Positions 1,474 through 32,308 of a stretch of 32,308 nt of DNA are shown here, in pieces. The stretch's first letter is position 1. Every line of letters starts with the position of its first letter. The notes under the pieces are model-generated. The model had not been told where the DNA came from. It did no database searches and was given only the letters and a program-made list of their open reading frames with translations. The stretch lies in the sequence record NC_004087.1. One strand, given 5' to 3'. Position numbers and translations under genes: made by a program.

Positions 1474-1697
1474 GCTATTTATTTTTGTTTTTTTCTGCTT
1501 AAGTTCTAATTCTTATTTTTCTTAATTTTAATTTTCCTTAAATTAACTAAGACTATCAACTATTTTTTTCAAGTTTGTGATATTAATTCTAAGGGTTGAA
1601 AATATGAAGAGATAAAAAGTTAGAGAGATAGAAAGATAAAAGTTTAGAGAAAGATTTAAATAGAGAGTAATACGAAATAAAAATTGAGGCGAAAAAT

Positions 1698-1970: not shown

Positions 1971-2117
1971 ATTTCATAATTTTTTTCTTTTTCTAAATTT
2001 AGTCCAATTTATGCCGAATTTTTTTCATTTTCCAAATATTATTCCAAGAGGTTGAAAATATTGAGAGATGAAAATATAAAATTGTCATAGTTTTATCGAA
2101 AATATAGTGAGAAAAAA

Positions 2118-2426: not shown

Positions 2427-2476
2427 TTAATCAAAAATTTATAAAAATGTCATATATTGAAAAATTAGGTGACAAT

Positions 2477-2677: not shown

Positions 2678-2726
2678 TATTTGACAATTTTTTAAAATCA
2701 ATATTTAAAAATGTCATGTTTTTATA

Positions 2727-3044
2727 ATGAATTATATGATTTTCAATTCATTAATTGTTCAAAAATATATTTTAAATAATGCAAAAGCAGTTGCTACAAT
2801 TAGGAAAAAAGGTTATTATAAATTATATCAAAAAATTATTTTGAAAGTTGGAGATAAAAGATTTTATGGAAAAGTTATCGCAAAAGCTCCAGTTACTGAA
2901 TATTGTCTTTCAAAATATGTGAAATTTAGCGGATTTGAAAATGTTGAGAATTGGTTAAATGAAGCTAAAAGACTTCATAATGATAAAATAGATTTTGAGA
3001 GATATGAAATTATTGTAATTTGGATAAATGATTCATTCTTCTAA
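2727..3044 (+). CDS. ASCH/PUA-like domain protein
   Basis: ILNNAKAVATIRK matches the ASCH IxxGxKxxTxR motif; SGFENVENW matches the xGFxSxEEW motif. Confidence 0.65.
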   Translation: MNYMIFNSLIVQKYILNNAKAVATIRKKGYYKLYQKIILKVGDKRFYGKVIAKAPVTEYCLSKYVKFSGFENVENWLNEAKRLHNDKIDFERYEIIVIWINDSFF

Positions 3045-3953
3045 TTCTATACTATTTTTCTTTTTATTTTGTTGTTTCTCTTTCTTTAACTCATTTGCAA
3101 TTTTATAGTTCTGAATTATTTCAGTTACTAAACTATCAAGTCCCATTTTCCTTAATTTTTCTGCATATATCGTATATTTATTTTTTATATTCCAATTATT
3201 ATATTTTAAAATCCAGGCATTCATAGTTTTTAAAATTTTTACATTTGAGAAATCATATTCAAATGGAAAATTTGTTTTATCTAAGAATTCGAAAAGTTTC
3301 TCTTCTTCTTCTTTTGTTAAAGTTCTTTCTTTTCTATCTCCTACATATCTTCTAGTTCCATCAAACCAAAAAATTTCACGATAGCTTGCTGTTTTTGTAT
3401 AAGTTGTAGTATCCATAGAGTTAGCCGTATCAAAAATTTGAAGAAAATATGGAGCAGACATACCTAGAACATGTAGTCTTTTTACATATTTTCTAATATA
3501 ATAATACCACGGAAATGTATAAATTAAAATTTTTAATTTACTAGATGCAATTATTCCGCCAAATGCAATATAATCAGTATATTGGCTATAAAAATCTATA
3601 GCTTCATCTACTTCTCTAGTTGGATAAAGATGTATAACTGGGATAATTCTTTCTATATATTCCATTTTCGTATATAGATATTCGAAATATTCAAAATTCT
3701 TTCTATCAAGAGGAGAAAAAATAGATGGAATATCAAGAGAAAAAAATGCATAAGCATTATACGTTTTGTATTTTTCTAATACATCTTTTACTGAAATTTT
3801 TAAATTGTATAACGCAATTTGATAGCCACCGCTATCGACCCAAGTTTCATTTTTCCAGGTTATCTTTTTGTTTCGTAATTGATTGATCAAAATTGGAAAA
3901 TTTATTTTAATTAATAAATCTTGTGATGAGACAATTCCAAATACTATTTTCAT
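3033..3953 (-). CDS. tgt: tRNA-guanine transglycosylase (TGT)/DpdA-like enzyme
   Basis: Motifs VDSGGYQ, LDIP, PVIH, IAFGG, HVLG and SMDTTT (nucleophile Asp position). No CxCxxC zinc site. Confidence 0.88.
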   Translation of the reverse strand: MKIVFGIVSSQDLLIKINFPILINQLRNKKITWKNETWVDSGGYQIALYNLKISVKDVLEKYKTYNAYAFFSLDIPSIFSPLDRKNFEYFEYLYTKMEYIERIIPVIHLYPTREVDEAIDFYSQYTDYIAFGGIIASSKLKILIYTFPWYYYIRKYVKRLHVLGMSAPYFLQIFDTANSMDTTTYTKTASYREIFWFDGTRRYVGDRKERTLTKEEEEKLFEFLDKTNFPFEYDFSNVKILKTMNAWILKYNNWNIKNKYTIYAEKLRKMGLDSLVTEIIQNYKIANELKKEKQQNKKKNSIELEE

Positions 3954-3961
3954 ATAGCTTT

Positions 3962-5161
3962 CTATTTTGGTATGACATTTATTTTACTTTTTCTTAATAA
4001 GTATACTATAGCTCCTATTATTGGTAATATCATAATTCTTAATATTGTATATTCTATATTTCCGGCAATTACAAATTTATAGAATATTGGATTTTGATAT
4101 CCTAGATAAAAGAATAGGAATATCTGAATTGCTAAAGATGTTAGAACTATAGAAAATAATTTTTTATCATTCATAAGTTTCAAATATGCAAATGCTACAA
4201 TTATGAAGTTCCAAAATATGAATAATAATCCGTCTAGTCCGAAAGATATGTTAAATCCTAGCAAGTTTTCTAGAACATTTGCTATTGTTTCTGTTGAGAA
4301 AATTAGCAATAAAACATTTGGATTTATTTTGCTAAATTTTTCTGGTAATACTTTATCAAAACTCATAGTTTGAATTAATCTACTTTGGATTTTATTTGCA
4401 ATTGGCATGTAACTAAAGAACCAAATTGGCATTAGTGCAAACAATATGTTTAAATTTGAATAGCTATCTAGAATTGATAATATTGCTACGACACCATAAC
4501 TTACAAAATATCCTATCATACTTGATTTTTTAATATTTTTAATTTCTCCAGCTATATAACTAATTGCATTTATGAAAATGAAAGCAGATAAATCAAATAG
4601 TAAAGCAGATAATAAAGTATTAGAAATTGTGAAAGTCTGATATTGATAATTGAAAGATTTAAAAGCTATAAATATTGCAATTATTATTTGGAATATTGCT
4701 AATATGTCTACAATTTTTGCATATATTCTCTTACTTGCTATAATTAGTAAAACAAGAGGAAATAGAGATTCGACAATTAGAAATTGTTCAAATTGATTTT
4801 GAATATTAAAGTTTAAGAGTACAAGATCTCCTAAGATTGGCTGAGATAGTACATATGTTAGCCATAATGAAATTCCAAAAATTGTGTAAAATTTTGAAGA
4901 AAATGCAGTTCTAATATAGGCGTAATCACCGCCATTTAATGGAAATTTTGTTGTTAGTTTATAGTACATTAAAAGAAGTGGAATTTCAAATACTGCTCCA
5001 ATTACAATTGCAAAAAGTAGATTTACATTTTTCATTAGACTTGAAACAAATAACGGATAACTTATTCCGCTTAAAATTCCCATATAGAGAAGATTTATTG
5101 AAAAAATATCTAAAACATTAAATGATTTAATTATTCCAGAACTTTTTCTTTCTAATTCCAT
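3962..5161 (-). CDS. APC-superfamily permease
   Basis: Many hydrophobic helices and the APC signature FPLNGGDYAYIRTAF. Confidence 0.85.
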   Translation of the reverse strand: MELERKSSGIIKSFNVLDIFSINLLYMGILSGISYPLFVSSLMKNVNLLFAIVIGAVFEIPLLLMYYKLTTKFPLNGGDYAYIRTAFSSKFYTIFGISLWLTYVLSQPILGDLVLLNFNIQNQFEQFLIVESLFPLVLLIIASKRIYAKIVDILAIFQIIIAIFIAFKSFNYQYQTFTISNTLLSALLFDLSAFIFINAISYIAGEIKNIKKSSMIGYFVSYGVVAILSILDSYSNLNILFALMPIWFFSYMPIANKIQSRLIQTMSFDKVLPEKFSKINPNVLLLIFSTETIANVLENLLGFNISFGLDGLLFIFWNFIIVAFAYLKLMNDKKLFSIVLTSLAIQIFLFFYLGYQNPIFYKFVIAGNIEYTILRIMILPIIGAIVYLLRKSKINVIPK

Positions 5162-5204
5162 AAGCTAGCTAAATTGCTAAGACATAAATAAAGTCACACA
5201 ACTA

Positions 5205-5222
5205 ATACATAATATAATGTAT
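5205..5222. promoter_or_regulatory. Palindromic operator ATACAT-N6-ATGTAT upstream of the permease
   Basis: ATACATAATATAATGTAT; related copies at 11074, 11798, 13857, 20272 and 24617. Confidence 0.6.
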
Positions 5223-5397
5223 ATAGTGTGTTCTTTTTATAAGTAAAACTTGATTAAATTCTTATTTATGACAACAAAATTTTTTTATAAAAATCTCATA
5301 GCAAGTAAATCAAACCATATACATAATATATATTATATAGTATATTGGTTTAAGAATTAGTTGAGAAAAAAAAGAAAATATCTTTAATTAAATTTTT

Positions 5398-5568
5398 TTA
5401 ACCGTTTCTCTTTTGCAAATACTCCTTTATAGCCTCTTCAATTGCCTGAGTTAGCTGGAGATTATTTTTTGCACAATAAACTTTTAGTCTAGTCTTTAAA
5501 TCTTTATCCATATATATACCAAATACTGCTTTTTGTTTCTTTTTTTGACTCTGTTCTTGAGTTTGCAT
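5398..5568 (-). CDS. svtR: SvtR ribbon-helix-helix repressor, 56 aa; missing from ORF track
   Basis: Manual translation MQTQEQSQKKKQKAVFGIYMDKDLKTRLKVYCAKNNLQLTQAIEEAIKEYLQKRNG. GAGG SD; GTC promoter at 5594-5610. Confidence 0.93.
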   Translation of the reverse strand: MQTQEQSQKKKQKAVFGIYMDKDLKTRLKVYCAKNNLQLTQAIEEAIKEYLQKRNG

Positions 5569-5592: not shown

Positions 5593-5952
5593 TTATGACA
5601 TTTTTATATCTTTTTTTGTCTTTAGCATATACTTATATACATTTTTTATATCGCTAATAGACTTTGGAACTAATTCAATTCTAATGTCAGAATGTGAAGG
5701 CATATGTTTGTGAACTCTAGAATAATCTAATTTTTTATTCGTGAAAACTAAAATATGATAATGTAGACCATTTGAATTTTTTGTAGTTTCTTTTATAGAA
5801 AATACATGTGAATTTTTATCATGATTATAAATATAACTACGAAATTTTCTAAATATTTTTTCAGTATCTCCATACTTATAATTAGTTGTAATAGTAATGA
5901 AATAAGTGTAAATATAAGAAAAATGAAAATTTAAAACTTTTTTCAAATCCAC
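5593..5952 (-). CDS. rep: HUH-superfamily Rep nicking protein
   Basis: HUH motif GLHYHILV and catalytic YxxK motif (YMLK). Confidence 0.93.
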   Translation of the reverse strand: MDLKKVLNFHFSYIYTYFITITTNYKYGDTEKIFRKFRSYIYNHDKNSHVFSIKETTKNSNGLHYHILVFTNKKLDYSRVHKHMPSHSDIRIELVPKSISDIKNVYKYMLKTKKDIKMS

Positions 5953-6053
5953 GATATTACGTGTGAAAATGACGTTTAAAAACTTATGTTGTTGGAAAAA
6001 CGAAAGGTTTAAAAATGCTTAATCAAAAATTTTTATAAACGAGGTGACTAGAG

Positions 6054-6320
6054 ATTCAGAGTAGAAAATATATATGCTTAAGAGTGCCAAGTCAGTTAAA
6101 AGAAAAATTCTATGAAAAAAGAGATGAAATAAAGAGAGAATTAGATCAGATTTTAGAAGGTAAAAGAAAGTTAGAAATTAAAGAAATTAGTGATTTATAT
6201 GATGAACAAGTTTTTTTTACTGTAGATATGCTATATTATGAAAAACTTCAAGAACTAGCAAAAAAATACAAAAAATCGTTATCAAAAATAATAAGATCTG
6301 TATTCTTTAATCTAAGTTAA
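6054..6320 (+). CDS. Tandem ribbon-helix-helix protein; probable non-AUG (ATT) start at 6054, track start GTG 6084
   Basis: Open in-frame upstream extension IQSRKYICLRVP supplies an RHH beta-strand. Second RHH is QVFFTVDMLYYEKLQELAKKYKKSLSKIIR. GAGGTGA SD at 6041-6047. Confidence 0.7.
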   Translation: MQSRKYICLRVPSQLKEKFYEKRDEIKRELDQILEGKRKLEIKEISDLYDEQVFFTVDMLYYEKLQELAKKYKKSLSKIIRSVFFNLS

Positions 6321-6402
6321 ATCCTTTTTTTCTTTTTCTTTTTTATCTCTCATATTATGTATTGGAAATTCTATATTTCTCTTCATATTACGAAATTAAA
6401 AA

Positions 6403-6419
6403 GATATAAAAATGTCATA
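6403..6419 (+). promoter_or_regulatory. Representative rudiviral TATA+GTC promoter GATATAAAAATGTCATA
   Basis: TGTCAT(A/G) core found at 2083, 2448, 2712, 6413, 8841, 11853, 12893, 15345 and 24673 (+), and at 3971, 5267, 5594, 10970, 26988, 28361 and 30221 (-), mostly 15-45 bp before a start codon. A GTC element after TATA is established for rudiviruses. Confidence 0.8.
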
Positions 6420-6447
6420 ATTAAAAGATATTTTTAGGGGAAGAAAC

Positions 6448-6843
6448 ATGGCATCCCTTAAAGAAATAATAGATGAGTTAGGAAAACAAGCTAAAGAACA
6501 AAACAAAATAGCTTCTAGAATTCTAAAGATAAAAGGAATAAAAAGAATAGTAGTACAGTTGAATGCAGTACCACAGGATGGAAAGATAAGGTATTCGCTA
6601 ACAATACACAGTCAAAACAACTTCAGGAAACAAATTGGAATAACGCCACAAGATGCAGAAGATTTAAAGTTAATTGCCGAATTTCTAGAGAAATATAGCG
6701 ATTTCCTAAATGAATATGTAAAGTTTACTCCTAGAAATAATAACGCAATACAAGAAGAAGAAATAGATATGGAACAACAAGAAGAAAAAGAAGAGAAACC
6801 AAGAGAAAAAGGCAAAAAGAAATCAGTTGAAGAGGAGTTTTAA
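6448..6843 (+). CDS. DNA-binding (SSB-like) protein ORF131, SIRV2 Gp17 family
   Basis: Recognised rudiviral sequence with a charged disordered C-tail ending EEEF; first gene of the ATPase-nuclease operon. Confidence 0.8.
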   Translation: MASLKEIIDELGKQAKEQNKIASRILKIKGIKRIVVQLNAVPQDGKIRYSLTIHSQNNFRKQIGITPQDAEDLKLIAEFLEKYSDFLNEYVKFTPRNNNAIQEEEIDMEQQEEKEEKPREKGKKKSVEEEF

Positions 6844-6868
6844 AACGTCATAGCCTAATTTTTTTTTC

Positions 6869-8191
6869 ATGAGTGGAAACCAGCAAACGAACTCTCAATT
6901 GTTTGAAAAGTTAAAAAGTCATTCTTTTTTTTATAATCCAAGAGATAATGAAAGAATTTTAAGTCTAATTCTTGGAGAAAAACAAGTTGAAGAAAATAAG
7001 AAAATTGAGATTTTAAAAGCTTATAAAAGAGGAATAGATTCACAATATTTTAGTGCTAATTTGCCATATTATAACGAAATAAAATTTATTTCTAAGATAA
7101 CTGGATTTAAGGTAAAAGATGATCTAGTTATTGCAAAATTTCAAAATGGATTTACTGGTGATTTTGATCCTCATGAAATTGCAGATAATCCAGATGATTT
7201 TTACAACCTAATTTCTTCATATATGTTTGTAAAAATTAAAAAAGGATCAGAAAATTGGTTTATTGATGAAATATTTTCTATTGAACCTCCTAATAATTTT
7301 GAAATTGCAAAAGAAATTCTAGAAGAAGCTGATAAAGAACATTTAACTTATGCCGTTTTACTTCAAGCTTTTGGCTATGATTCGCAAAAAATGGATTCAG
7401 ATGATATTTTTCTAACTTTACCGCGATTATTTCCATTATTTAAATCTCCAATTACTAAGAGACAAATTAATACTATTGAAATTTCAAACCGCGGAACTGG
7501 AAAAACTACAACATTTATGATTTTACAAGAAGTTTTCAATTTCAGATATTACACTGAACCGCCGACTTATGCAAATTTAATATATGATGCTAGAAATAAT
7601 ATGTATGGTTCAGTATTTTTATCGAATGGATTAATTTTTGACGAAATACAAACTTGGAAAGATGGATATGCAGTTAAAGAACTAAATTCTATAAATTCCA
7701 CTCTTTCAACTGGAATTGAAAATTGTATATGGACTAGAGGCGCCGGTACAGAAAGTAAATCTGCTACAATTCAAAAATGTATTCCAATAATTTATGCTGG
7801 AAATCCATTTTCACTAACTCTAGATAAATATCAAACTCCAGATATAGAATCATATTTACAACAATATGAAATTTTTACGCCTGCAATTCTAGATAGAATT
7901 CATATTATTCAATTAGCAATTAAGAAAACTTATGATAAAATAATAAATGCTAGAGTTCTATATCCTTCAATTCTAAGAGCATTAGTAGAATTAATTCAAG
8001 AAAAAATTAACAGAACTACAAATTATGCAGATTGTGGGAATTTGGAAAGTAGGAGAAAAGAACAATCTATAGATATTCAAATAGTTCTACAAGCACTTGA
8101 TATAGATCTGCAAATTGGAAAAGTTTCAAATGAAGAAGTATGTAATAAAATTGTGAATTTAATGAGATTTAGTAATTTAGGAGGATGGTAA
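6869..8191 (+). CDS. AAA+ ATPase/helicase-like protein (BrxL/MCM-related)
   Basis: Walker A RGTGKTT, Walker B LIFDE, sensor IIYAGN, arginine finger ILDRIH. Confidence 0.88.
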
Positions 8192-8808
8192 TCATGAATT
8201 ATGAAGATCATATAAAAGAAAGCTTTAAAGTTAAATATCCTGCAGATACGATTTTTCCATCTGAAGTTGGTATTTGTTATAGAAAAAGTTATCTTGCTAG
8301 AAATATTGAATTTGAAAGAGGAATAAATGAAATTTATTTAGATTTAGGAGAACAATATCATGAGAGAATTGAACAATATTTTAAAGAAAAATTGAATTGT
8401 CAAACTGAAGTTGAAATTAAAGATGAAATTGAAGGAATAAAAATTAGCGGTAGAATTGATATAGTTTGTAATAATGACTTATTGGAAATTAAAACAATTA
8501 GTTATAATTATTTTCAAGTAAAAGAATATCACTTATATCAAGTTGCATTATATTATCATATTCTTAAAAAGCAAAATTATCAAATTAATAATGTATATAT
8601 TGTATATTTAAATAGGAATACTAGAGAAGTTAAGCAATTTAAAATTGATGAAAAAGTTTTAGAAAATTATTATCAAAAAGTTATTGAATGGATAAAGAAA
8701 TTTAAAGAATATCTAAAAGAAACAGATTATAAAAAAGTTCCAGGAGTTAACAATTATATTTGTAAATCTTGCGAATTCAAACAAAAATGCATTATATCAC
8801 TTTTTTAA
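8185..8808 (+). CDS. cas4: Cas4-like Fe-S exonuclease
   Basis: PD-(D/E)xK motif GRIDIV...LLEIKT, QVALY, one N-terminal Cys plus C-terminal CxxCx5C. Confidence 0.92.
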
Positions 8809-9293: not shown

Positions 9294-9335
9294 TTAAATT
9301 ATACTAAAATAAAATGAAATAAAGAGCTGAGTCAA

Positions 9336-10953: not shown

Positions 10954-11073
10954 ATTTTAGTTAAGCAGATATGACAATTTAATAGTTTTGTGTATTACAT
11001 TATATAGTATAATATATAGTATATAATTTCCGGGATTATTTTCATAGTAATTTTTACAAATCTTAGTAGTCAT

Positions 11074-11091
11074 ATACATTATATTATGTAT
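11074..11091. promoter_or_regulatory. Palindromic operator ATACATTATATTATGTAT upstream of the capsid gene
   Basis: Identical 18-mer at 20272-20289. Confidence 0.65.
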
Positions 11092-11141
11092 AAGACGTGA
11101 AAATTTATTAATTTAAAGAATAAAATTGATATTGACCAAAA

Positions 11142-11744: not shown

Positions 11745-11876
11745 AAGGAGAAATTTGGATTTGACATTTTTAAATGCTATTAAATCCAATCAACCATATA
11801 CATTATATAATATATATGAATTATAGGTTAAGTTGTTAGTCAGCTTTATTTTTGTCATAATTTTTATTTTTATCTC

Positions 11877-20196: not shown

Positions 20197-20317
20197 CAAT
20201 TTCCAAATGCCATATACATTATATTTATTATATGAATTATAGCTTACAGGTTTACATGAGAAACAACTCATATACATTATATTATGTATTAGATTTGATT
20301 TTTTATTTACGGCATTT

Positions 20318-24564: not shown

Positions 24565-24695
24565 ACAATTTTAATAAGTAACTGACTAAAATAAAGTGTC
24601 ACATCTTATAACTCATATATATTATATAATGTATATGGTTTGTTCTCATTTAGATCATTTAAAATTAAAATATGTCATATTGTTTAGAAATTATT

Positions 24696-25308: not shown

Positions 25309-26379
25309 ATGCAGAAAACTATTTTCTATGTTTATCCACAACATCACGACGTTTCTTTCAAATTTGTAGCTCAAGAACATGTAAAAATGCTTAGAGAGAA
25401 ATACATAGTTTACGAAATTCCAACTTTATCATTCTATCAGTTCACTCCTTTCAGATATCCAATTTCCATAATTCATCCGCTATTCTATTCTATGTGGAAA
25501 TGGGGAAAAATAGAGTTTTCATTTTTTGAACAATATAGAACTAGAGTTTCCGCACTTCTAGGAGTTGAAGTAGCAGATACTGATAAAATTGCAAAACAAT
25601 ATATAGAATATGCAAATAATTTTACGGATGGAATGATTTTAAATTCTGAGTGGTCTGTTAATGCATTTAAAAATTCTGGATTAAAAGTACCGGCTTATAA
25701 AGTTTTCCATAATTTTAAAGATAGATTATTAGCAAAAAATGAAGAACTAAAATTAGATGATCAAATTCTATATATTGAAAAATTAAAGAAAGAGAAGAAT
25801 TTCAAATTAATATTTATCTCATTATGGCATAGTGATTATAGAAAAGGTGCCGATATTTTTCATGTAATAGCTAAGGAACTACAAAAAGAAAGAAATGACA
25901 TATATTTTCTAGTAAAAAGCGGATTACCGAGAACTGATTTTCAAGATCTCAAAATGTTTAACATTTTCGGAAATACTTCATTTGATAATATCGTTAAAAT
26001 GTATAGAATTTCAGACTTATATTTACTAACTAGTAGAGGCGGTAGTTTCGAATTAAATGGTCTAGAAGCATTTATAAGCAAAATTCCCGCGTTAGCGACA
26101 AAAGGTGGAGCTTGGGAAGATTATTATCCTCCTAATTTGAAAGATCTCCTAATTGATAGCTGTGAAAATCCACAAATATTTCCAGATAATCCAATTCATA
26201 TTGGAAATGGAGTTCAAATGTGTATAGGAAAAGCTATAGATAAAATTCTAGAAGTACTAGATAATTATGATAACTATAAAGCTAAAATTGAGGAAAATTA
26301 CAATTTCTGGATAGAAAACTTTAGCTATAATGCAGTAAAAAAACAATTACTTGAAGTTATGGAAAAATATTCTAATTAA
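25309..26379 (+). CDS. GT-B (GT4-like) glycosyltransferase
   Basis: YRKGAD and SRGGSFELNGLEA motifs. Confidence 0.9.
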   Translation: MQKTIFYVYPQHHDVSFKFVAQEHVKMLREKYIVYEIPTLSFYQFTPFRYPISIIHPLFYSMWKWGKIEFSFFEQYRTRVSALLGVEVADTDKIAKQYIEYANNFTDGMILNSEWSVNAFKNSGLKVPAYKVFHNFKDRLLAKNEELKLDDQILYIEKLKKEKNFKLIFISLWHSDYRKGADIFHVIAKELQKERNDIYFLVKSGLPRTDFQDLKMFNIFGNTSFDNIVKMYRISDLYLLTSRGGSFELNGLEAFISKIPALATKGGAWEDYYPPNLKDLLIDSCENPQIFPDNPIHIGNGVQMCIGKAIDKILEVLDNYDNYKAKIEENYNFWIENFSYNAVKKQLLEVMEKYSN

Positions 26380-26652
26380 TTACCGAGACCTCCAAAAATC
26401 AATTTCGATAATACAGACTTTGTTATCTTTCCAAAAATAATTAATTATTGAATGAATATTGTTTCTATATTCATAAAAATCAACTGTTCTATTTTTTTCA
26501 GCATATCTATACGTTAAATCACCATCTTTAATAATTTCTTCAAATTGATTATACGAAACTATTATTTCTTTATTTAACATTAAATTCATTCTTACTATCG
26601 TCTGATCCTGGAAAAATTTCTCAACAATTGATTTTAATTCTTCAAACTCCAT
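26380..26652 (-). CDS. acrID1: AcrID1-family protein (start MEFEEL at 26652)
   Basis: MEFEELKSIVEKFFQD...IIEIDFWR matches both AcrID1 termini; GAGGTGG SD. Confidence 0.8.
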   Translation of the reverse strand: MEFEELKSIVEKFFQDQTIVRMNLMLNKEIIVSYNQFEEIIKDGDLTYRYAEKNRTVDFYEYRNNIHSIINYFWKDNKVCIIEIDFWRSR

Positions 26653-26664
26653 TTTTACCACCTC

Positions 26665-26952
26665 TTATCTTTTCTCACGAAATAGATCAATTTCTAGAAT
26701 ATGTATAAAACCTTTTTCTTTAAAATAATAAATAATAAGTTTAACAAGTGTATTTGATAATTCATAATATACAAACTCATCTGATAATACCCAAGGATCT
26801 TTATCTACAAAAGATAGATTTGGTCTTCCTACTAATTCGTTATACTCATTTTCTGAAACTATTAAAGGTCTCTTAAAGGCTAAAGTTAACTCATTAAGAT
26901 TTTTTTCTTTAAAAAACATGTCTATAATTCGTTTAACTTTTTTCAAATTCAT
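26665..26952 (-). CDS. acrID1: AcrID1-family protein (start MNLKK at 26952)
   Basis: MNLKKVKRIIDMFFKE...ILEIDLFR. The track GTG at 26964 is part of the GGTGA SD. Confidence 0.75.
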   Translation of the reverse strand: MNLKKVKRIIDMFFKEKNLNELTLAFKRPLIVSENEYNELVGRPNLSFVDKDPWVLSDEFVYYELSNTLVKLIIYYFKEKGFIHILEIDLFREKR

Positions 26953-27101
26953 TTCCTGTTTCACCTATCTCTAAAAATCAAAAATTCTATGACATTTTTA
27001 TATCTTTATTTTTTGGAATAAGTAGGATTAATATTTGGAATTTGAGAAAAATTATCGATAGAATTAGGTAATGTTAAAAAATAAAAAAAATAAAAAAAAG
27101 A

Positions 27102-27404
27102 TTAACTTTCTAAAAGTAATCTAACATAATCTACAATATCTTCTTTTATGCACAAAAATTTCTTGTCTCTTTTAACTCTTTTTATCTTTATGAAAAAGAT
27201 ATTTTTATCAACTAATCGTTTTATTCTAAGATATCCGAAATATTGGTATCGATTTGCATCCTTTTGAAAAAGAAATAGTTTACCTTCACTAGTGTACATA
27301 GGAATGCATAAATCATTATCGCTATCTTTCTGTGCAAGAGAAAAAAATCTAATCAGAAGTTCTTTTTGCTTAGGATACAATTTAATTTGGACTTCTTGAC
27401 TCAT
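27102..27404 (-). CDS. 100-aa hypothetical protein, possible winged helix (start moved from 27440)
   Basis: GGTGA SD before MSQEV; promoter AGAGAAAGCTTTATATA at 27440-27456. Confidence 0.7.
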
Positions 27405-27608
27405 TTCTTTCACCTTAATATCATATATGTATAAACTCATATATAAAGCTTTCTCTATCTTTTTATCTCTTTAATTTTTCAACCTTCTGAATTAATATCA
27501 TAAACTTGAGAAAAATTATTGATAAAATTAGATAATTTATGGAAAATTTAAAATTAGAAGAATTAGAATTAGTATTGAAAAAATAAAAAAAATTATTAAT
27601 AAAAAAAA

Positions 27609-28334
27609 TTAATCTTTTGGATTCTTTTTCGGTACGGGATGTGAAAACAATAACCATTTACCGCCAAATTCTGTAAATCCAACATTATCATGTTCTGGCG
27701 AAATAATTTTTACAACTGGTGGTTCTGGTAAATATACTAAAGCTCCTTCTCCCGGCATTATATGTAATTGTTTATATTTTAATACATTAATATCAAATTC
27801 AATAATATGATTATAAATACCAATTATTCTAGTTTTTTCAAAAAGTTCTTCATTAATTTTTTCTATCTTTAACGGCGGTACTTCATATACACTTAAATGT
27901 CCTTGTTTACCATCAGGATAAAATGCCGGCGAAAATTCTAATTTTTCTCCTTTATAATAAATATCAAATAATTGAATTGAATAATTATCATACTTTATTA
28001 TTATTGATGAACTCTTTAATGAAACTTTAGATAAATCTAAATTTATTAACATTGATTTAATATCATTAATTTTTCTGAATATTTTCTGTTTGAAAGTAAT
28101 ATTGAATATCGGCGGATTAGGTGTATAGTATATTCCGTTAGTTTCCTTAGCTTTATCAACTTTTATTTTATTTTCTAGAATTGATACTTCAAAACAGCCT
28201 TGAAATGTTAATCTACTTCTTGAAATGTACTTTTCACAATTTATAAATTTATCTGTTACAGAAATTTTATTTCCATCAGGAAGTAAAAAAACATTTGGAA
28301 GATAATCTAATTTTTTTCTTTCTTTTATCTCCAT
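27609..28334 (-). CDS. AcrIIIB1 paralog (241 aa)
   Basis: Aligns end to end with the next gene (KKLxxLPxVF, SRSxxTxxGC, QGHLxVY, WLLFSH). Confidence 0.8.
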   Translation of the reverse strand: MEIKERKKLDYLPNVFLLPDGNKISVTDKFINCEKYISRSRLTFQGCFEVSILENKIKVDKAKETNGIYYTPNPPIFNITFKQKIFRKINDIKSMLINLDLSKVSLKSSSIIIKYDNYSIQLFDIYYKGEKLEFSPAFYPDGKQGHLSVYEVPPLKIEKINEELFEKTRIIGIYNHIIEFDINVLKYKQLHIMPGEGALVYLPEPPVVKIISPEHDNVGFTEFGGKWLLFSHPVPKKNPKD

Positions 28335-28568
28335 TTATTTCACCAATTTATCATTCTGTATATGACATTTATAAATTTTTATTTAAGTTTTTACGTTTAT
28401 ATCTCATTATTTTTGTATTTTTTTATACTTATAATTTCTGTAGAAATACAATTAATATAACAAAAATGAGAAAAATTATTGATAAAATTAACTATTTAGA
28501 AGAAAATTTAAAATTAGAAGAATTAGAATTAATATCTAAAAAATGAAAAAAATAGTTGATAAAAAAAA

Positions 28569-29318
28569 TCAATCTTGACCTGATCTCCTGGGTCTTGTAT
28601 GGCTGAACAATAACCAAGTGTCTCTATTAACGTTAACTTCAACTTCTTTATGGTCAGAACTTTCAAGTTTAACGTGAACATCTTCTGGAACATAAAGTAA
28701 TGTCCCACTACCTGGAGTAACGTAAAGGTTCTTAAACATCAATATAGACTTATCAAAGGTAACTTTATGGTTAAAGATCATAAATTCGCTAACTTCCGTA
28801 AACAATTCTTTATTAATCTCTCTTTTTTGACCATCATTATCATAGTAAAGTAAATAAACATCTTTCGGCTCTGGAACACTATAAATCCTAAGATGACCCT
28901 GTTCTGCAAGTAACGGAAATTCATAAATCAATCCTTTGAAATAAATATCAAATACTTCAATTGAATAATTGCTATATTTTACCAATAACCATGGTTGCCT
29001 TGGCGAAATTTTCGATACGTCTAAGCTCATTAAAAATTGTTTCAAGTCATCAAGATTCCTAATCGCTTTCTGTCGAAAAGTAATATTGATTATTGAAGGA
29101 TGCGGAACATAATAAATTCCTTTGACCTCTTTCAGAGTATCAATTTTTAACATTGATCCGACTGTATAGCCTGTCACACAACCTTCTTGGGTTAGTCCAG
29201 ATCGGGATACGTAATGAACACAGTTTATATAATTCTTGTCTAATGTAAACTTATTTAAATAGATGTCCAAAAAAACTTTGGGTAAATTGTTTAACTTTTT
29301 CCTTACACTTACCTCCAC
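28569..29318 (-). CDS. acrIIIB1: AcrIIIB1-family anti-CRISPR, 249 aa (GTG start at 29318)
   Basis: MEVSVRKKLNNLPKVFLD...WLLFSHTRPRRSGQD closely resembles the remembered SIRV2 AcrIIIB1. The track GTG at 29327 is part of the GGTGA SD. Confidence 0.88.
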   Translation of the reverse strand: MEVSVRKKLNNLPKVFLDIYLNKFTLDKNYINCVHYVSRSGLTQEGCVTGYTVGSMLKIDTLKEVKGIYYVPHPSIINITFRQKAIRNLDDLKQFLMSLDVSKISPRQPWLLVKYSNYSIEVFDIYFKGLIYEFPLLAEQGHLRIYSVPEPKDVYLLYYDNDGQKREINKELFTEVSEFMIFNHKVTFDKSILMFKNLYVTPGSGTLLYVPEDVHVKLESSDHKEVEVNVNRDTWLLFSHTRPRRSGQD

Positions 29319-29351
29319 TTTATTCACCGATATATAATATGCTAATTCTCA

Positions 29352-29368
29352 TATATAAAGTTTTCTCT
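29352..29368 (-). promoter_or_regulatory. BRE+TATA promoter of acrIIIB1
   Basis: AGAGAAAACTTTATATA, identical to 1254-1270. Confidence 0.8.
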
Positions 29369-29465
29369 ATGTTTTTACATTTCTATTTTTCATCTTCAAA
29401 ACTTGAAAAAAATAAAGAATCAGAATATAAAAAAGATTAAAAAAATAATACCTTAAAAATTAGAA

Positions 29466-29762
29466 TTACTTAGCTTGAGAACTTGGATTTTGATCTTTTG
29501 CTTTTTCTCTAGCTAATGAATTTACATCTCTTAAAGTATCCATATTCAATAATGCATTTATTCCAGTTACTGTAGTATCTTTAATTGATTCAATAGCAGT
29601 AACTGTACTTTTCGACATTTGATCAATAGCCTTAGCAAAATTCTCATTAGATTGCTTTTCATTATATAAGTGTACTATTTCTCCAATTATGAAACTTGCA
29701 ATTAGTACACCTGTCACTGCAAAAAATCCATATAGTGCTCCTTCTAATAATGTTATTGCCAT
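29466..29762 (-). CDS. Virus-associated pyramid protein P98 (PVAP), egress
   Basis: Recognised sequence MAITLLEGALYGFFAVTGVLIASFIIGEIVHLYNEKQ with an N-terminal transmembrane helix. Confidence 0.97.
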   Translation of the reverse strand: MAITLLEGALYGFFAVTGVLIASFIIGEIVHLYNEKQSNENFAKAIDQMSKSTVTAIESIKDTTVTGINALLNMDTLRDVNSLAREKAKDQNPSSQAK

Positions 29763-29937
29763 TTCTGGTCAAAAAATAATATTCAGAACTAAATAATATA
29801 GTTTTCTGTAAATTTAAAAAAATAAAGAATTTTTCAGAAAGATAGATATCAAAATTAGAAAAGAAATAGAATTATTATCATAAACATGAGAAAAATTATT
29901 AATAATTTTGGCTATATGAAAAACTAGAAAAAGAAAT

Positions 29938-30192
29938 TTAAGATTTTTTAGTACGCCATAATTGAATTTCATATAATAAAGCTTTTTCATTATCTGCTAA
30001 CTCTTTAGTATTAATTTTTATTTCAATATTATCATTTGAAGGATAAATAAATTGACTAAATGCTAATTCAATTAATTGTTGATATTCTTCTTCATTAATT
30101 TCAAAAGAAATTTTAAATTTTAAACTTAATTCTTGTATAATAGAATCTTCAAAAAACAAATCCATAATTTTTTTAACTTCTTTAAAACTTAT
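29938..30192 (-). CDS. Cryptic AcrID1-family paralog; ATA at the expected start (track start 30165); possibly a pseudogene
   Basis: Upstream extension ISFKEVKKI-MDLFFED aligns to the AcrID1 N-terminus; C-terminus EIQLWR; GGGGA SD 7 nt before the ATA. Confidence 0.7.
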   Translation of the reverse strand: MSFKEVKKIMDLFFEDSIIQELSLKFKISFEINEEEYQQLIELAFSQFIYPSNDNIEIKINTKELADNEKALLYEIQLWRTKKS

Positions 30193-30338
30193 TTTTCTTT
30201 CCCCAATATTTTCATAAAATTATGACAATTTTATATTTTTATCATCCTATATTTTCAACCTCTAGAAATAATATCTGAAAATGAAAAAAATTCGGCATAA
30301 ATTGGACTAAATTTAGAAAAAGAAAAAAATTATGAAAT

Positions 30339-30611
30339 TTAACTAATCGATTTTGTCATTTCAATATTTTCTATTTTTAATTTATTGCCTTGTTTTTTCA
30401 ATATTAACTTCACTGATTCTTTCTTAAACATAAATTCGATTTCATTATCGAATAATTCGATATTATCTTCACGTATTCCGTAAAACTCACTTATTTCTTT
30501 AATAATTTTTTCGGCAATATTGCTTTTTCTTATCAATCTAAAAAATCTTTTTTGATTTGTATACTTTTGAGCTAAATTAATTACTTTTTCTTGCATTTCT
30601 TCTACTTGCAT
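30339..30611 (-). CDS. Hypothetical 90-aa protein (ITR copy 2)
   Basis: Identical to 1698..1970. Confidence 0.85.
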   Translation of the reverse strand: MQVEEMQEKVINLAQKYTNQKRFFRLIRKSNIAEKIIKEISEFYGIREDNIELFDNEIEFMFKKESVKLILKKQGNKLKIENIEMTKSIS

Positions 30612-30835
30612 ATTTTTCGCCTCAATTTTTATTTCGTATTACTCTCTATTTAAATCTTTCTCTAAACTTTTATCTTTCTATCTCTCTAACTTTTTATCTC
30701 TTCATATTTTCAACCCTTAGAATTAATATCACAAACTTGAAAAAAATAGTTGATAGTCTTAGTTAATTTAAGGAAAATTAAAATTAAGAAAAATAAGAAT
30801 TAGAACTTAAGCAGAAAAAAACAAAAATAAATAGC

Positions 30836-31003
30836 TTAACAACTCTCCAAATATCTGCGTACCTTTCTCTCTGAAACGCCTAAAGCGTTTGCTATCTGTT
30901 GAACTGTGTAACCCATCTTAGCCAACTCGTGAGCCACGCTAACTAAGTCATCTTCTGACTCTACATAATATCTTACGCCTTGAACTTGTATTTCCTTTTT
31001 CAT
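30836..31003 (-). CDS. 55-aa HTH protein (ITR copy 2)
   Basis: Mirror of 1306..1473. Confidence 0.92.
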   Translation of the reverse strand: MKKEIQVQGVRYYVESEDDLVSVAHELAKMGYTVQQIANALGVSERKVRRYLESC

Positions 31004-32308
31004 TTCTCATTCACCAATCTTATATATGCATAAACTAGTATATAAAGTTTTCTCTCAACTTTTACGNTTNNANTTTTCGACTTTCAATTTTTAAGAATCA
31101 GATTGAAGATTCCAATTTTTACACATCCAATTTTTTAAAAAAGGCCACTTTTTTTTACAAAAGTGAAAAAAACAATTTTTTCCACTCCAAATATTTTAAA
31201 GAGGCCACTTTTTATTCCTAGGCTGAAACAAATCAAACAGATTTTTAACANCTTNCANTTATTATTTCATTTCTCAACCTAAAATTGTAACTTCCAATTG
31301 GAGCGGTAAAAAAGTCTAAAACAATCTATTTTGAGTCTGAAAATAATTATATAATTAATAATTACTATCTAGCTAGTTAGCTAATATATATAATATGATA
31401 ATTAGCTAATTAGCATAATATAGAAATATATAAATAACAAAATATTACGACTGTAATAATATTAATAAAATAAAAAAAATAATAAAAAAAAGAAGGATAG
31501 TCCTCACTACTATAATTAAATGTCTTCTGGTAGTATTTAAACTTTTCTTTCTAAACTTCCAATTTCCTCCATTGCAAACGCAAAAAACTGTAGTGAAATT
31601 TCTGAATATGTTTAGTAATTTAATAATTTTCCGCCGTAAAAGTTTTGGTTTGCATTAATTATATATTTGCAAATTAGAAACTTGGAAATTATATAATATA
31701 TTATAATATATGAATATGTTTAGTATATTTATAATTTTTTGACGGAAAAGTTTTGGTTCCTCCTAATTATTAATTAATAATTTAATAGTTCCTAATTTAT
31801 ATATATCTGGAAATGTATAATTATTTGGAATTTAGGAATTTACAATTAAGCAATTTTATATTATAAATTTCAACAAATGATAGAATATTTGGAATTTTGT
31901 AATTTCCAATTTACATAACTAATTGGAATAATTTTCCAAGATGTACAATTAATTGGAATTTTGGAATTTACAATTTTATTAACTTTTTGTAATAAATTTC
32001 CAAGATGTAGAATTTATTGGAATTTAGGAACTTAGGAATTTCCAATTTTATTAATTTGTTGGAATAATTTTACAAGGTGTAGAATTAATTGGAATTTAGG
32101 AACTTCCAATTTATTAACTTTATTTCGAAAATTACGCAAAATGACAGAATAATTGGAATTTAGGAATTTAGGAATTTTCAATTTATTAACTTTGGTGCGA
32201 AAAAAACGAAAAAAACGAAAAAAATTGGAATTTCCAATTTATCTCATTAGTTGCGAAATTTACGCAAAAAATGAAAAAAACTCCCAATACCTTCTTACTN
32301 CTCTACAA

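What the first reader, a model, noticed from the sequence alone, without database searches (positions are those of the whole stretch)
26995..30835. Dispersed intergenic module makes the accessory arms look like interchangeable gene cassettes
Seen: the spacer 27460-27600 is homologous over ~140 bp to the ITR spacer 30691-30835 (mirror 1474-1618). Compare TTTTATCTCTTTAATTTTTCAACCTTCTGAATTAATATCATAAACTTGAGAAAAATTATTGATA with TTTTATCTCTTCATATTTTCAACCCTTAGAATTAATATCACAAACTTGAAAAAAATAGTTGATA. Partial copies with core (A/T)TGA(G/A)AAAAAT start at 27042, 28466, 29403, 29886 and 30281. On the coding strand each reads T-rich terminator of one gene, then linker, then promoter of the next. Unrelated or paralogous small genes therefore sit between homologous flanks. 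Inference: these flanks are recombination substrates, possibly for the viral Hjc/Cas4/ATPase set, allowing anti-defence genes to be gained, lost, duplicated or swapped as expression-ready cassettes, an integrase-free analogue of an integron array.
Basis: partly seen in the sequence, partly recalled or inferred. Interest (0 to 1): 0.8.

Follow-up and report, generated by a model that had tools for sequence, protein, structure and literature searches.

The report
Shared terminator-promoter spacers flank arm genes
The small accessory (mostly anti-defence) genes at both ends of the archaeal virus SIRV1 are separated by copies of one conserved terminator-plus-promoter spacer, and comparison with sister isolates and published deletion mutants shows that gene blocks are lost and swapped by recombination inside these spacers, much as in the promoter-terminator cassettes already known from T4-like phages.

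Summary
The window is the complete SIRV1 genome. Three long copies (about 170-220 nt) and five partial copies of one intergenic module fill every spacer of the right arm from gp38 to gp45 and two spacers of the left arm, always in coding orientation. Similarity is far above AT-matched shuffles (z = 13-27; 0 of 3,250 shuffled spacers reach the real scores). On the coding strand the module reads stop codon, T-runs, a conserved core (TATCNATAATTTTTYTCANNTTTNTGATATTAATTC), then GGTTGAAAA and GAGATAAAAA, then BRE/TATA, SD and ATG. Its promoter half is the published "anti-defence gene regulatory sequence" of rudiviruses (Nat Commun 2024). The recombination idea is partly supported. In SIRV1 variants, SIRV2 and SIRV3, every recent synteny junction in the arms lies in a spacer or within about 20 nt of a gene end. 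Junctions are in register with the module and often in the core. The perfect ITR of SIRV1 ends inside a core. A published spontaneous 4-kb SIRV2 deletion joins two cores at a shared 13-mer. Junctions are scattered, so this is homologous, not site-specific, exchange. There is no evidence for a dedicated integron-like system. The closest analogue is the PeSL cassettes of T4-like phages.

The parts
30612..30835 (-). Full module, spacer gp45 (Aca8) -> gp44. Core at 30722-30759; BRE/TATA AGAAAGATTTAAATA at 30647-30661. The exact mirror in the left arm is 1474-1697.
28335..28568 (-). Full module, spacer gp41 -> gp40. Core at 28452-28489, plus a second degenerate core directly after the gp41 stop (28531-28566).
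27405..27608 (-). Full module, spacer gp40 -> gp39. Core at 27491-27528; degenerate core at 27571-27606; BRE/TATA AGAAAGCTTTATATA at 27440-27454. The gp39 start is better placed at 27404 than at the annotated 27440.
26953..27101 (-). Partial module, spacer gp39 -> gp38. Core at 27027-27064 (TATCGATAATTTTTCTCAAATTCCAAATATTAATCC).
   Evidence: (E 2e-8)
29763..29937 (-). Spacer gp43 -> gp42 (pyramid protein). Core copy at 29866-29915. The piece 29835-29936 that carries it is absent from variant XX, SIRV2, SIRV3 and variant AJ703805. The gp42 promoter proper (last 72 nt) has no module.
30166..30338 (-). Partial module, spacer gp44 -> gp43. Core at 30268-30304. The inner end of the perfect ITR (30277) lies inside this core. 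The left-arm counterpart is 1971-2117.
29328..29465 (-). Weak module, spacer gp42 -> gp41: a T-run with a core remnant (29333-29413) and BRE/TATA AGAAAACTTTATATA at 29352-29366.
   Evidence: (E 2e-3)
31006..31081 (-). Promoter half of the module only, upstream of gp45 (Aca8). BRE/TATA at 31039-31053. Mirror at 1228-1303.
1474..1697 (+). Left-arm full module, spacer gp01 -> gp02 (inside the ITR).
1971..2117 (+). Left-arm partial module, spacer gp02 -> gp03. The 100% ITR identity ends at 2032 inside the core. The 100% identity to variant AJ703801 begins at about 2018-2025 in the same core.
26380..31003 (-). The genes between the modules: gp37, gp38 and gp43 (weakly related to one another and to gp03; gp03 and gp38 are annotated as AcrID1 family), gp39 (ADG.09), gp40 and gp41 (AcrIIIB1 family, 41.5% aa identity), gp42 (pyramid protein), gp44 (= gp02), gp45 (= gp01, Aca8).

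Best explanation
The module is the composite intergenic unit of the rudiviral accessory arms. On the coding strand it has three parts:
(i) T-runs that end transcription of the upstream gene;
(ii) a conserved ~40-nt core whose own T-run (AATTTTTYTCA) is the last terminator-like signal, and which marks the boundary between what travels with the upstream gene and what travels with the downstream gene;
(iii) the upstream element plus BRE/TATA promoter, 5'UTR and SD of the next early (anti-defence) gene.

It is conserved mainly because it works as a regulatory sequence. That part is known: strong early promoters, with repression by Aca8 (gp01/gp45) as the published inference.

Each arm carries about 7-10 co-oriented copies that are 65-95% identical over 90-170 nt, and the two arms carry them in inverted orientation. 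The copies therefore also act as dispersed homology for ordinary homologous recombination, single-strand annealing or template switching during replication.
- Exchange between direct copies deletes the cassettes between them.
- Exchange between copies in different genomes replaces cassettes.
- Exchange between copies in opposite arms copies one end onto the other, which sets the ITR length.

Shown here: the repeats, their anatomy and distribution, and in-register junctions inside them in natural variants and in one laboratory deletion.
Inferred: termination at the T-runs; which enzymes act; that gene gain also uses this route.
For: Anatomy:
- The alignment of nine spacers gives the layout described above.
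- A 171-position profile has its highest information in the core.
- TTTTTYT is strand-biased, 244 sense to 21 antisense, and 34-fold denser than in arm CDSs.
- The 8 exact AGAAANNTTTAWATA sites are all in the arms and all point inward.

Published regulatory role:
- Terminal small genes of SIRV2/SIRV1 share a regulatory sequence with BRE plus TTTAWATA and are early genes; repression by Aca8 is the authors' inference (PMC11065993).
- SIRV1 gp01/45, gp02/44, gp39, gp40 and gp41 are listed there as anti-defence or associated genes.

Distribution:
- 64 of 72 arm spacers of SIRV1, variant XX, SIRV2, SIRV3 and variant fragments carry the module.
- It is also found in US rudivirus SIRV10 and in the anti-defence cluster of lipothrixvirus SIFV.
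- An IUPAC core pattern hits only 29 stretches in all of IMG/VR. Twenty lie on contigs whose lengths match sequenced rudi- and lipothrixvirus genomes, and most stretches carry 2-8 co-oriented profile hits.

Constraint rather than homogenisation: the nearest relative of a copy is usually the orthologous spacer in another genome (0.85-1.0), while same-genome copies are 0.65-0.83 identical.

Recombination:
- An unbiased scan of whole arms (>=96% HSPs whose continuation is <=72% identical) found 11 junction points inside the gene-bearing parts. None is more than 20 nt inside a CDS, although spacers are only 27-36% of arm length.
- Fine maps show in-register switches at profile positions 64, 72, 80, 88, 91, 104, 112-117, 123, 132, 136, just after the TATA box, and in a 5'UTR.
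- The perfect ITR of SIRV1 stops at 2032, inside the core.
- The spontaneous SIRV2M deletion 1491-5474 joins ...ATTTTTTTCAAGT|TTGTGATAC to ...ATTTTTTTCAAGT|CTGTGATAAT, i.e. two cores in register.
- The second SIRV2M deletion (32426-33939) also has both ends inside module copies.
- SIRV3 carries a ~150-nt, ~95% identical direct repeat of the module bracketing gp04-gp06, with unrelated genes on all four sides.
- The gp40 and gp41 3' flanks are 86% identical over 102 nt although the proteins are 41% identical, and the similarity stops at the core.
Against: - No transcript 5'/3' ends were available here, so termination at the T-runs is inferred from sequence and from what I recall of Sulfolobus terminators.
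- Spacer-located junctions are also what selection against broken genes would leave. Gene-boundary junctions occur where there is no module: the ORF260 indel with a 39-nt direct repeat at 2426-2464, and the indels near 9301/9627 and 12884/12899 against variant XX.
- One of three spontaneous SIRV2 deletions (5678-8557) ends inside gp10 and gp14.
- The published right end of the 32426-33939 deletion is about 34 nt out of register with the module alignment.
- Junction events are few (about 9-12) and not fully independent, because several comparisons see the same event.
- What makes the non-T positions of the core so conserved is unexplained.
Confidence: 0.75

Rival explanations
1. The module is purely regulatory. 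It is only a shared terminator/operator/promoter. Recombination in the arms is illegitimate or microhomology-driven and occurs anywhere, and junctions appear in spacers only because recombinants with broken genes, or without promoters, are lost.
For: - Junctions at gene boundaries also occur where no module exists.
- One spontaneous SIRV2 deletion ends inside CDSs.
- There is no genome-wide homogenisation of copies.
- This is the classic Hendrix-type explanation for gene-boundary joints in phages (my own knowledge, not checked here).
Against: - Arm genes are individually dispensable in CRISPR-null hosts (PMC6315595), so selection against in-gene junctions should be weak. Even so, none of 11 junction points is deep inside a CDS.
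- Junctions are in register with the module alignment, without indels.
- The SIRV2M left deletion lies exactly at a shared 13-mer in two cores.
Confidence: 0.2
2. The arms are a dedicated, selected recombination system. The core is a signal recognised or processed by viral proteins (SSB, annealing ATPase, Cas4-like nuclease, Hjc), so that cassettes are actively exchanged.
For: - About half of the mapped junctions fall in or next to the ~40-nt core (profile positions 64-107).
- Non-T positions of the core are conserved across rudivirus genera and in SIFV.
- The virus encodes ssDNA-binding, annealing and nuclease functions, according to the SIRV3 record annotation.
Against: - Other junctions lie at positions 112-136, just after the TATA box and in the 5'UTR, so there is no single site.
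- No recombinase or binding data exist for the core.
- Core conservation is equally explained by terminator or operator function.
- No conserved structure was found.
- Copies evolve as orthologues rather than being homogenised.
Confidence: 0.1
3. The module is a relic of duplication. The spacers are similar only because the cassettes arose by tandem duplication of an ancestral gene plus its flank. The similarity is decaying and has no function.
For: gp40/gp41 are paralogues. gp03, gp37, gp38 and gp43 are weakly related to one another (25-27% identity), and gp03 and gp38 are annotated as AcrID1 family.
Against: - Flanks are far better conserved than the genes: 86% DNA identity in the flanks against 41% protein identity.
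- The module also flanks unrelated genes (Aca8, gp39, gp44).
- It is conserved across genera and in a lipothrixvirus.
- It contains functional promoter elements documented in the literature.
Confidence: 0.03
4. The conserved feature is an antisense element. On the strand opposite the arm genes the core reads NTG-ARA-AAA-ATW-...-TAA, a 9-codon mini-ORF, or an antisense transcript start.
For: 40 of 45 distinct copies begin with ATG/TTG/GTG, and 40 of 45 have the stop exactly at codon 10.
Against: - There is no third-position excess of variation: entropy is 0.58, 0.53 and 0.70 for codon positions 1, 2 and 3.
- A 9-residue product is implausible.
- There is no suitably spaced TATA box upstream (by reading the sequence).
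- An A-rich antisense of a T-run gives K/I/R codons automatically.
Confidence: 0.04

Closest known systems
PeSLs (promoter-early stem-loops), the composite terminator/promoter cassettes of T4-like phages (Arbiol et al. 2010, PMC2839356; Comeau et al. 2014, PMC4122927)
   Same: - A ~100-nt conserved intergenic motif running from the stop codon of one gene to the SD/start of the next.
- It combines a terminator with a strong early promoter.
- It is concentrated in the hyperplastic regions of non-essential ORFans.
- Differences between close relatives (insertions, deletions, replacements) map to the motifs.
- The proposed mechanism is homologous exchange between copies that brings promoter and terminator along.
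   Different: - There is no sequence relationship between the two.
- The promoter here is an archaeal BRE/TATA, not sigma-70.
- There is no stem-loop here, only T-runs.
- The genome is linear, with the copies inverted between its two arms, so inter-arm exchange changes the ITR.
- Mini-circles have not been looked for.
- This motif also carries a presumed repressor (Aca8) target.
Anti-defence-gene (ADG) early regulatory sequence of Aca8-encoding rudiviruses (Bhoobalan-Chitty et al. 2024, PMC11065993)
   Same: The same virus group, the same genes (SIRV1 gp01/45, gp02/44, gp39, gp40 and gp41 are listed) and the same BRE + TTTAWATA core promoter with conserved flanks. This is the 3' half of the module.
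   Different: - That study analysed only 100 nt upstream of start codons. The core sits 75-155 nt upstream of the next ATG, so it and the T-rich 5' half mostly lie outside that stretch.
- The word 'recombination' does not occur in the main text of that paper.
- I could not see its motif logos, because figures are not held.
Integron gene-cassette arrays (attC/attI with the IntI integrase)
   Same: An array of co-oriented small accessory genes separated by a recurring non-coding element, with gain and loss of whole genes.
   Different: - Integron cassettes are promoterless and are expressed from Pc; here every cassette carries its own promoter.
- attC is a structured single-strand site cut at a fixed position by a tyrosine recombinase. 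Here there is no integrase, no conserved structure, and junctions scattered over about 110 nt.
SIRV1 variant rearrangements (Peng et al. 2004, Mol Microbiol 54:366; not held, known here only through PMC4390879 and PMC5537682)
   Same: The same genome and the same variant sequences (AJ748296, AJ703801-05) that I used. Rearrangements, deletions and gene changes in the arms were reported.
   Different: I could not read the paper, so I cannot say whether it mapped breakpoints to the shared spacers. Its emphasised novelty was 12-bp indels.

Membership tests
Rudiviral ADG early regulatory sequence (PMC11065993) | Lies upstream of single small genes at the genome termini of an Aca8-encoding rudivirus | tested here: met
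   All copies lie in arm spacers in coding orientation. Aca8 is gp01/gp45.
Rudiviral ADG early regulatory sequence (PMC11065993) | Contains a purine-rich BRE followed by the TATA box TTTAWATA | tested here: met
   Exact AGAAANNTTTAWATA is found upstream of gp39, gp41, gp44/02 and gp45/01. gp38, gp43 and gp03 use a variant (GAxAAAAATATAAAATTGTCATA), so the feature is met for most copies, not all.
Rudiviral ADG early regulatory sequence (PMC11065993) | Conserved sequence around the promoter is shared among genes of the same genome while the genes themselves are unrelated | tested here: met
Rudiviral ADG early regulatory sequence (PMC11065993) | Immediate-early transcription followed by repression, attributed to Aca8 | not testable with these tools
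   Expression data exist for SIRV2 only, as cited. Purified SIRV1 Gp1 did not bind random or plasmid DNA in vitro.
PeSL-type mobile regulatory cassette (functional class) | Composite terminator + strong early promoter between the stop codon and the next SD/start | tested here: inconclusive
   The promoter part is supported. The terminator part is inferred from strand-biased T-runs. No transcript ends were available.
PeSL-type mobile regulatory cassette (functional class) | A stable stem-loop acting as terminator | tested here: not met
   RNAalifold on 12 copies predicted 0 pairs, and there was no Rfam hit. From my own knowledge, archaeal termination uses oligo-T and does not need a hairpin. 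So this is a functional analogue, not a PeSL.
PeSL-type mobile regulatory cassette (functional class) | Enriched in hyperplastic regions, next to non-essential ORFans | tested here: met
   Copies occur only in the arms. Arm genes are dispensable in SIRV2.
PeSL-type mobile regulatory cassette (functional class) | Indels and replacements between close relatives have their junctions in the motifs | tested here: met
PeSL-type mobile regulatory cassette (functional class) | Excised mini-circles carrying one chimeric motif | not tested
   This needs outward-facing PCR or long reads on infected cells.
Integron | A site-specific tyrosine recombinase (IntI) with attI | tested here: not met
   No integrase appears among the 45 annotated genes. 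Rudiviruses are listed as non-integrating.
Integron | attC: imperfect inverted repeats that fold, with a fixed crossover point | tested here: not met
   No conserved structure. Junctions run from profile position 64 to beyond 171.
Integron | Promoterless cassettes read from one common promoter | tested here: not met
   Each spacer has its own BRE/TATA.

The most novel reading that the evidence does not exclude
The ~40-nt core (TATCNATAATTTTTYTCANNTTTNTGATATTAATTC) is more than a terminator. Under this reading it is a recombination hot spot that has been selected for. It could be a replication or transcription pause site, or a protein-bound site, that channels the viral ssDNA-binding protein, annealing ATPase, Cas4-like nuclease and Hjc to the boundary between cassettes. 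The arms of rudiviruses (and the anti-defence cluster of some lipothrixviruses) would then work as an integrase-free cassette-exchange system. It would also set ITR length and account for the reported instability of SIRV1.
Probability: 0.12. Interest if true: 0.8.

Novelty: new member of a known kind. Interest (0 to 1): 0.45.

Why it matters
Rudiviruses keep their anti-CRISPR and other anti-defence genes in fast-changing genome arms, and SIRV1 is reported to be unusually unstable. How genes enter and leave the arms has not, to my knowledge, been tied to a sequence feature.

If the shared terminator-promoter spacers are the sites of exchange, three things follow.
- Arm turnover, tandem paralogues (gp40/gp41) and the variable ITR length get one simple explanation.
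- Spontaneous loss of anti-CRISPR genes in laboratory stocks (SIRV2M) becomes predictable from the repeat map.
- The PeSL principle would extend from bacterial T4-like phages to archaeal viruses with unrelated transcription signals, which argues that it is a general outcome of arrays of independently expressed accessory genes.

Practically, the core pattern is very specific. It hits only 29 stretches in IMG/VR and could help to find arms and anti-defence clusters in metagenomic Ligamenvirales contigs.

Tried and rejected
- Conserved RNA structure in the core: RNAalifold predicted 0 pairs, and an Rfam E-value search of 26300-32308 gave only two sub-threshold snoRNA-like hits outside the modules.
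- Genome-wide concerted evolution of the copies: rejected, because orthologous spacers are closer than same-genome copies.
- An upstream ORF on the coding strand inside the core ([12 protein letters not shown]-type): start codons and frames are not conserved among copies (read, 73 sequences).
- An antisense 9-codon ORF: the start and stop pattern is striking, but there is no codon-position signal. I kept it only as a curiosity.
- Variant XX ORF134b and ORF114b as recent duplicates of the coat-protein and ORF114 genes transposed into the arm: there is no DNA similarity to the core copies at E<1e-8, so the names reflect length only.
- Similarity of the module to the 3' end of gp36 (families D9 and D13): two-copy matches of 69-86% over 21-39 nt, taken as chance and not pursued.
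- blastn alone suggested the module is limited to Icelandic SIRVs. The profile and the IUPAC scan showed this was a sensitivity limit.
- The sigma-70 promoter / hairpin-terminator scanner was not used because it does not model archaeal signals.
- Papers I could not obtain: Peng 2004 (Mol Microbiol), Kessler 2004 (PMC524901), Okutan 2013 (PMC3737344) and Vestergaard 2008 (PMC2566220).

Full report
**Identity and layout**

[quoted passage not shown] It has a perfect 2,032-bp inverted terminal repeat, 1-2032 / 30277-32308. All genes from gp37 to gp45 (26380-31003) are on the minus strand, and the left-arm genes gp01-gp05 are on the plus strand. In both arms transcription therefore runs inward. 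This is an archaeal virus, and nothing in the work raised a safety question.

Yes.
- The quoted 64-mers are at 27461-27524 and 30692-30755 and are 54/64 identical.
- 27460-27600 vs 30691-30835 is 77% identical over 145 columns.
- 1474-1618 is the exact mirror of 30691-30835.
- Pairwise local-alignment scores of the three spacers lie 13-27 standard deviations above dinucleotide shuffles.

- All hits are in arm spacers and in coding orientation.
- Nothing scores E<0.1 in the 24.7 kb between the arms.
- The same profile scores >=15 bits on 49 of 65 independent arm spacers from SIRV1 and its relatives.
- The best of 3,250 shuffled spacers scores 7.1 bits.
- The short motif WTGARAAAAAT occurs 13 times against 2.5 expected.

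**Anatomy**

I aligned the spacers on the coding strand. The order of elements is:
1. the stop codon;
2. one or more T-runs;
3. in the long copies only, TTCTAATTCTTCTAATTTTAAATTTTCC;
4. a ~40-nt core, TATCNATAATTTTTYTCANNTTTNTGATATTAATTC, which is the most information-rich part;
5. GGTTGAAAA and GAGATAAAAA;
6. a purine-rich BRE with a TATA box (for example AGAGAAAGCTTTATATA);
7. about 25 nt, then GGTGA and ATG.

Supporting counts:
- The Sulfolobus-type terminator signal TTTTTYT occurs 244 times on the sense strand and 21 times on the antisense strand of 72 arm spacers. That is 20.6 per kb against 0.6 per kb in arm coding sequence. The consensus itself is from my memory, not checked here.
- The eight exact matches to AGAAANNTTTAWATA in the genome are all in the arms and all point inward.
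- No conserved RNA fold and no Rfam family is present.

The genes between copies are largely unrelated. gp45 is Aca8, gp42 is the pyramid protein, and gp39 and gp44 are singletons. gp40 and gp41 are 41.5% identical paralogues. gp03, gp37, gp38 and gp43 are only weakly related to one another.

**What is already known**

Bhoobalan-Chitty et al. [quoted passage not shown] They reported that these genes are transcribed immediately after infection and inferred that they are then repressed by Aca8. They used the motif to predict anti-defence genes.

Their tables list SIRV1 gp01/45, gp02/44, gp39 (start 27404, as I had inferred), gp40 and gp41. That motif was sought within 100 nt of the start codon. 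It therefore corresponds to the 3' half of the module. The core lies 75-155 nt upstream of the next ATG, so it and the T-rich 5' half are mostly outside that stretch. The word "recombination" does not occur in the main text of that paper.

SIRV1's instability and the variant sequences I used come from Peng et al. 2004, which I could not read.

**Distribution**

- The final profile finds the module in 64 of 72 arm spacers of SIRV1, variant XX, SIRV2, SIRV3 and the variant fragments AJ703801-05.
- The main exception is the spacer upstream of the pyramid gene. Only the window carries a core there, on a 102-nt piece (29835-29936) that all relatives lack.
- The profile also detects the module in seven arm spacers of the Yellowstone rudivirus SIRV10 and in five spacers of the anti-defence cluster of the lipothrixvirus SIFV. 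It essentially does not detect it in SRV.
- An IUPAC pattern for the core matches only 29 stretches in all 2.9 million IMG/VR contigs. Twenty lie on contigs whose lengths match sequenced rudi- and lipothrixvirus genomes, and the other nine are on uncultivated viral contigs. Most stretches carry 2-8 co-oriented profile hits.

**Why is it conserved?**

Copies are not homogenised within a genome. The closest relative of a copy is usually the orthologous spacer in another virus (85-100%), whereas same-genome copies are 65-83% identical. This points to purifying selection on a working regulatory element, not to frequent gene conversion.

The flanks can be much better conserved than the genes. The 102 nt after the gp40 and gp41 stop codons are 86% identical to each other and to the flank of SIRV2 gp48, while the two proteins are 41% identical.

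**Is it used in recombination?**

I scanned whole arms, not only the spacers, for segments >=96% identical whose continuation drops to <=72%.
- Eleven junction points lie in the gene-bearing parts. Seven are in spacers and four are within 20 nt of a start or stop codon. None is deeper in a gene.
- Spacers make up 27-36% of arm length. By my arithmetic, if spacers plus 20-nt margins are about 36% of the arm, nine independent events all falling there has a probability of about 1e-4. Independence and neutrality are both doubtful, so this number is rough.

The fine structure is more telling.
- **Window left arm vs AJ703801 and AJ703802.** Identity is 100% from "TCATTTTCCAAATATT..." onward and only module-level before it. 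The switch is at 2018-2025, inside the core.
- **The window's own ITR.** It is 100% identical up to 2032, in the same core, and the next 100 aligned columns are 86-92% identical. One inter-arm exchange within about 2025-2032 explains both this and the previous observation.
- **AJ703801 vs AJ703802.** The switch is at the 5' edge of a core.
- **SIRV1 vs AJ703803.** The switch is immediately after the TATA box (window 1663 / 30646).
- **The SIRV2 ITR.** It ends at 1602, in the 5'UTR of gp02.
- **Others.** Further switches lie at profile positions 104, 112-117, 123, 132 and 136.
- **The spacer upstream of gp43 compared with XX, SIRV2 and AJ703805.** High identity begins at the core and continues into the gene, while the part 5' of the core follows the upstream gene.

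The core is thus the usual boundary between a "3' half" inherited with the upstream gene and a "5' half" inherited with the downstream gene.

SIRV3 shows the architecture directly. A ~150-nt, ~95% identical direct repeat of the module brackets gp04-gp06, with unrelated genes on all four sides.

**Laboratory evidence from the literature**

Mayo-Munoz et al. 2018 (PMC6315595, Table 1) give exact coordinates of spontaneous SIRV2 deletions. I mapped them on the SIRV2 record.
- **Deletion 1491-5474 (gp02-gp09).** It joins ...CCATTTTTTTCAAGT|TTGTGATAC to ...ATAATTTTTTTCAAGT|CTGTGATAAT. These are two cores, in register, at a shared 13-mer.
- **Deletion 32426-33939 (gp51-gp53).** Both ends are inside module copies. 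The left end abuts a 10-mer (TGAAAAAAAT) shared with the other copy. The published right end is about 34 nt out of register.
- **Deletion 5678-8557.** It ends inside gp10 and gp14 and does not use the module.

Modules cover about 18-19% of the SIRV2 arms. By my arithmetic, two of three deletions having both ends in modules has a probability of about 0.004.

**Limits**

- Junctions are spread over about 110 nt. This is homology-driven exchange, not site-specific recombination.
- Gene-boundary indels also occur without the module. Examples are a 39-nt direct repeat at 2426-2464 around ORF260 in two variants, and the ORF91 and ORF156 differences against XX.
- Nothing here identifies the enzymes.
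- Gain of new genes by this route is plausible but not shown.
- XX ORF134b and ORF114b are not DNA duplicates of the core genes of the same length.
- The reason for conservation of the non-T positions of the core is open. Candidates are an operator for Aca8 or a host factor, or part of the 3'-end signal.

**Comparison with known systems**

The closest known system is the PeSL of T4-like phages. It is a ~100-nt composite terminator/early-promoter motif between ORFans in hyperplastic regions, and homologous exchange between copies produces the indels and replacements that distinguish close relatives (PMC2839356, PMC4122927). The rudiviral module matches that description feature by feature, with three differences:
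- it has no stem-loop, and uses archaeal T-runs instead;
- it uses BRE/TATA;
- its copies lie in two inverted arms of a linear genome, so inter-arm exchange changes the ITR.

It is not an integron analogue in any defining respect. There is no integrase and no structured attC with a fixed crossover, and the cassettes are not promoterless.

**Verdict**

The terminator-linker-promoter reading is supported, and its promoter half is already published. The recombination-substrate inference is supported by natural and laboratory junctions, but as ordinary homologous exchange at a conserved regulatory repeat. The "integron-like system" framing is not supported.

I rate it a new (archaeal) member of a known kind, of moderate interest. 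My confidence in the best explanation is 0.75.

Noticed in passing
window cores, e.g. 27506-27535, 30737-30766, 27042-27071, 30281-30310 (+ strand): On the strand opposite the arm genes the core reads as a 9-codon mini-ORF, consensus (M/L)(K/R)KI(I/V/K/R)(D/H)x(L/I/F)x-stop. 40 of 45 distinct copies across SIRV1/2/3 start with ATG/TTG/GTG, and 40 of 45 stop exactly at codon 10. There is no codon-position bias in the variation, so it is probably a by-product of the conserved DNA motif.
   Followed up: partly
window 761-775 (+) and mirror 31534-31548 (-); ORF 802-864 (+): An exact strong-promoter match (AGAAAAGTTTAAATA) lies in the outer ITR with no annotated gene behind it. A 20-codon, very hydrophobic ORF (GTG start, MRTILLFFIIFFILLILLQS) begins 27 nt downstream. 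It may be an unannotated micro-gene or a non-coding early transcript.
   Followed up: no
window 5184-5224, 11072-11112, 20270-20309; also 11768-11825 / 24607-24664: A second, unrelated family of shared intergenic sequence (ATATACATTATATTATGTAT-type, partly palindromic) links spacers of core genes (gp07/08, gp18/19, gp20/21, gp24/25, gp30/31, gp34/35). It is presumably a shared middle/late promoter class.
   Followed up: no
window 2426-2464 vs L009 (AJ703802) 2404-2443 and 3182-3220; also L006: Variants carry an extra 783-nt ORF260 between ORF102/105 and ORF76. The indel is bounded by a ~39-nt direct repeat covering the stop, the 20-nt spacer and the first codons of ORF76. This is gene-boundary recombination without the module.
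   Followed up: partly
window 29835-29936: This 102-nt piece carries a core copy and is present only in the reference SIRV1, between gp43 and the gp42 promoter. Variant XX, SIRV2, SIRV3 and AJ703805 go straight from the upstream stop codon region to the 72-nt gp42 promoter. It looks like the scar of a lost cassette or an inserted half-module.
   Followed up: partly
L004 (SIRV3) 2378-2511 vs 3760-3948: A ~150-nt direct repeat of a whole module at ~95% identity brackets gp04-gp06, with unrelated genes on all four sides. It is a ready-made substrate for deleting, or the footprint of inserting, a three-gene block.
   Followed up: partly
L003 (SIRV2) 32426 / 33939: The published right-arm deletion of SIRV2M has both ends in module copies, but its right end is about 34 nt out of register with the module alignment; an in-register end would be 33973. 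Either it was an unequal event or the coordinate is imprecise.
   Followed up: partly
window 27404-27440 and 29318-29327: The RefSeq starts of gp39 (27440) and gp41 (29327) overlap the TATA box and 5'UTR of their own promoters. The starts at 27404 and 29318, each preceded by GGTGA, fit better and agree with Supplementary Data 1 of PMC11065993.
   Followed up: yes
window 31067-31075, 31251-31259, 32300 and their mirrors: Unresolved bases (N) remain in the ITR just upstream of gp45/gp01. They sit inside the promoter half of the module and slightly lower its score there.
   Followed up: no
L032 (contig length 41172) and L039 (contig length 31787), one core each; L028 (29763), 7 copies: The core pattern also turns up singly on contigs with the lengths of Acidianus filamentous virus genomes, and seven times on a 29.8-kb contig. 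The element may therefore be older than the Sulfolobus rudiviruses.
   Followed up: no
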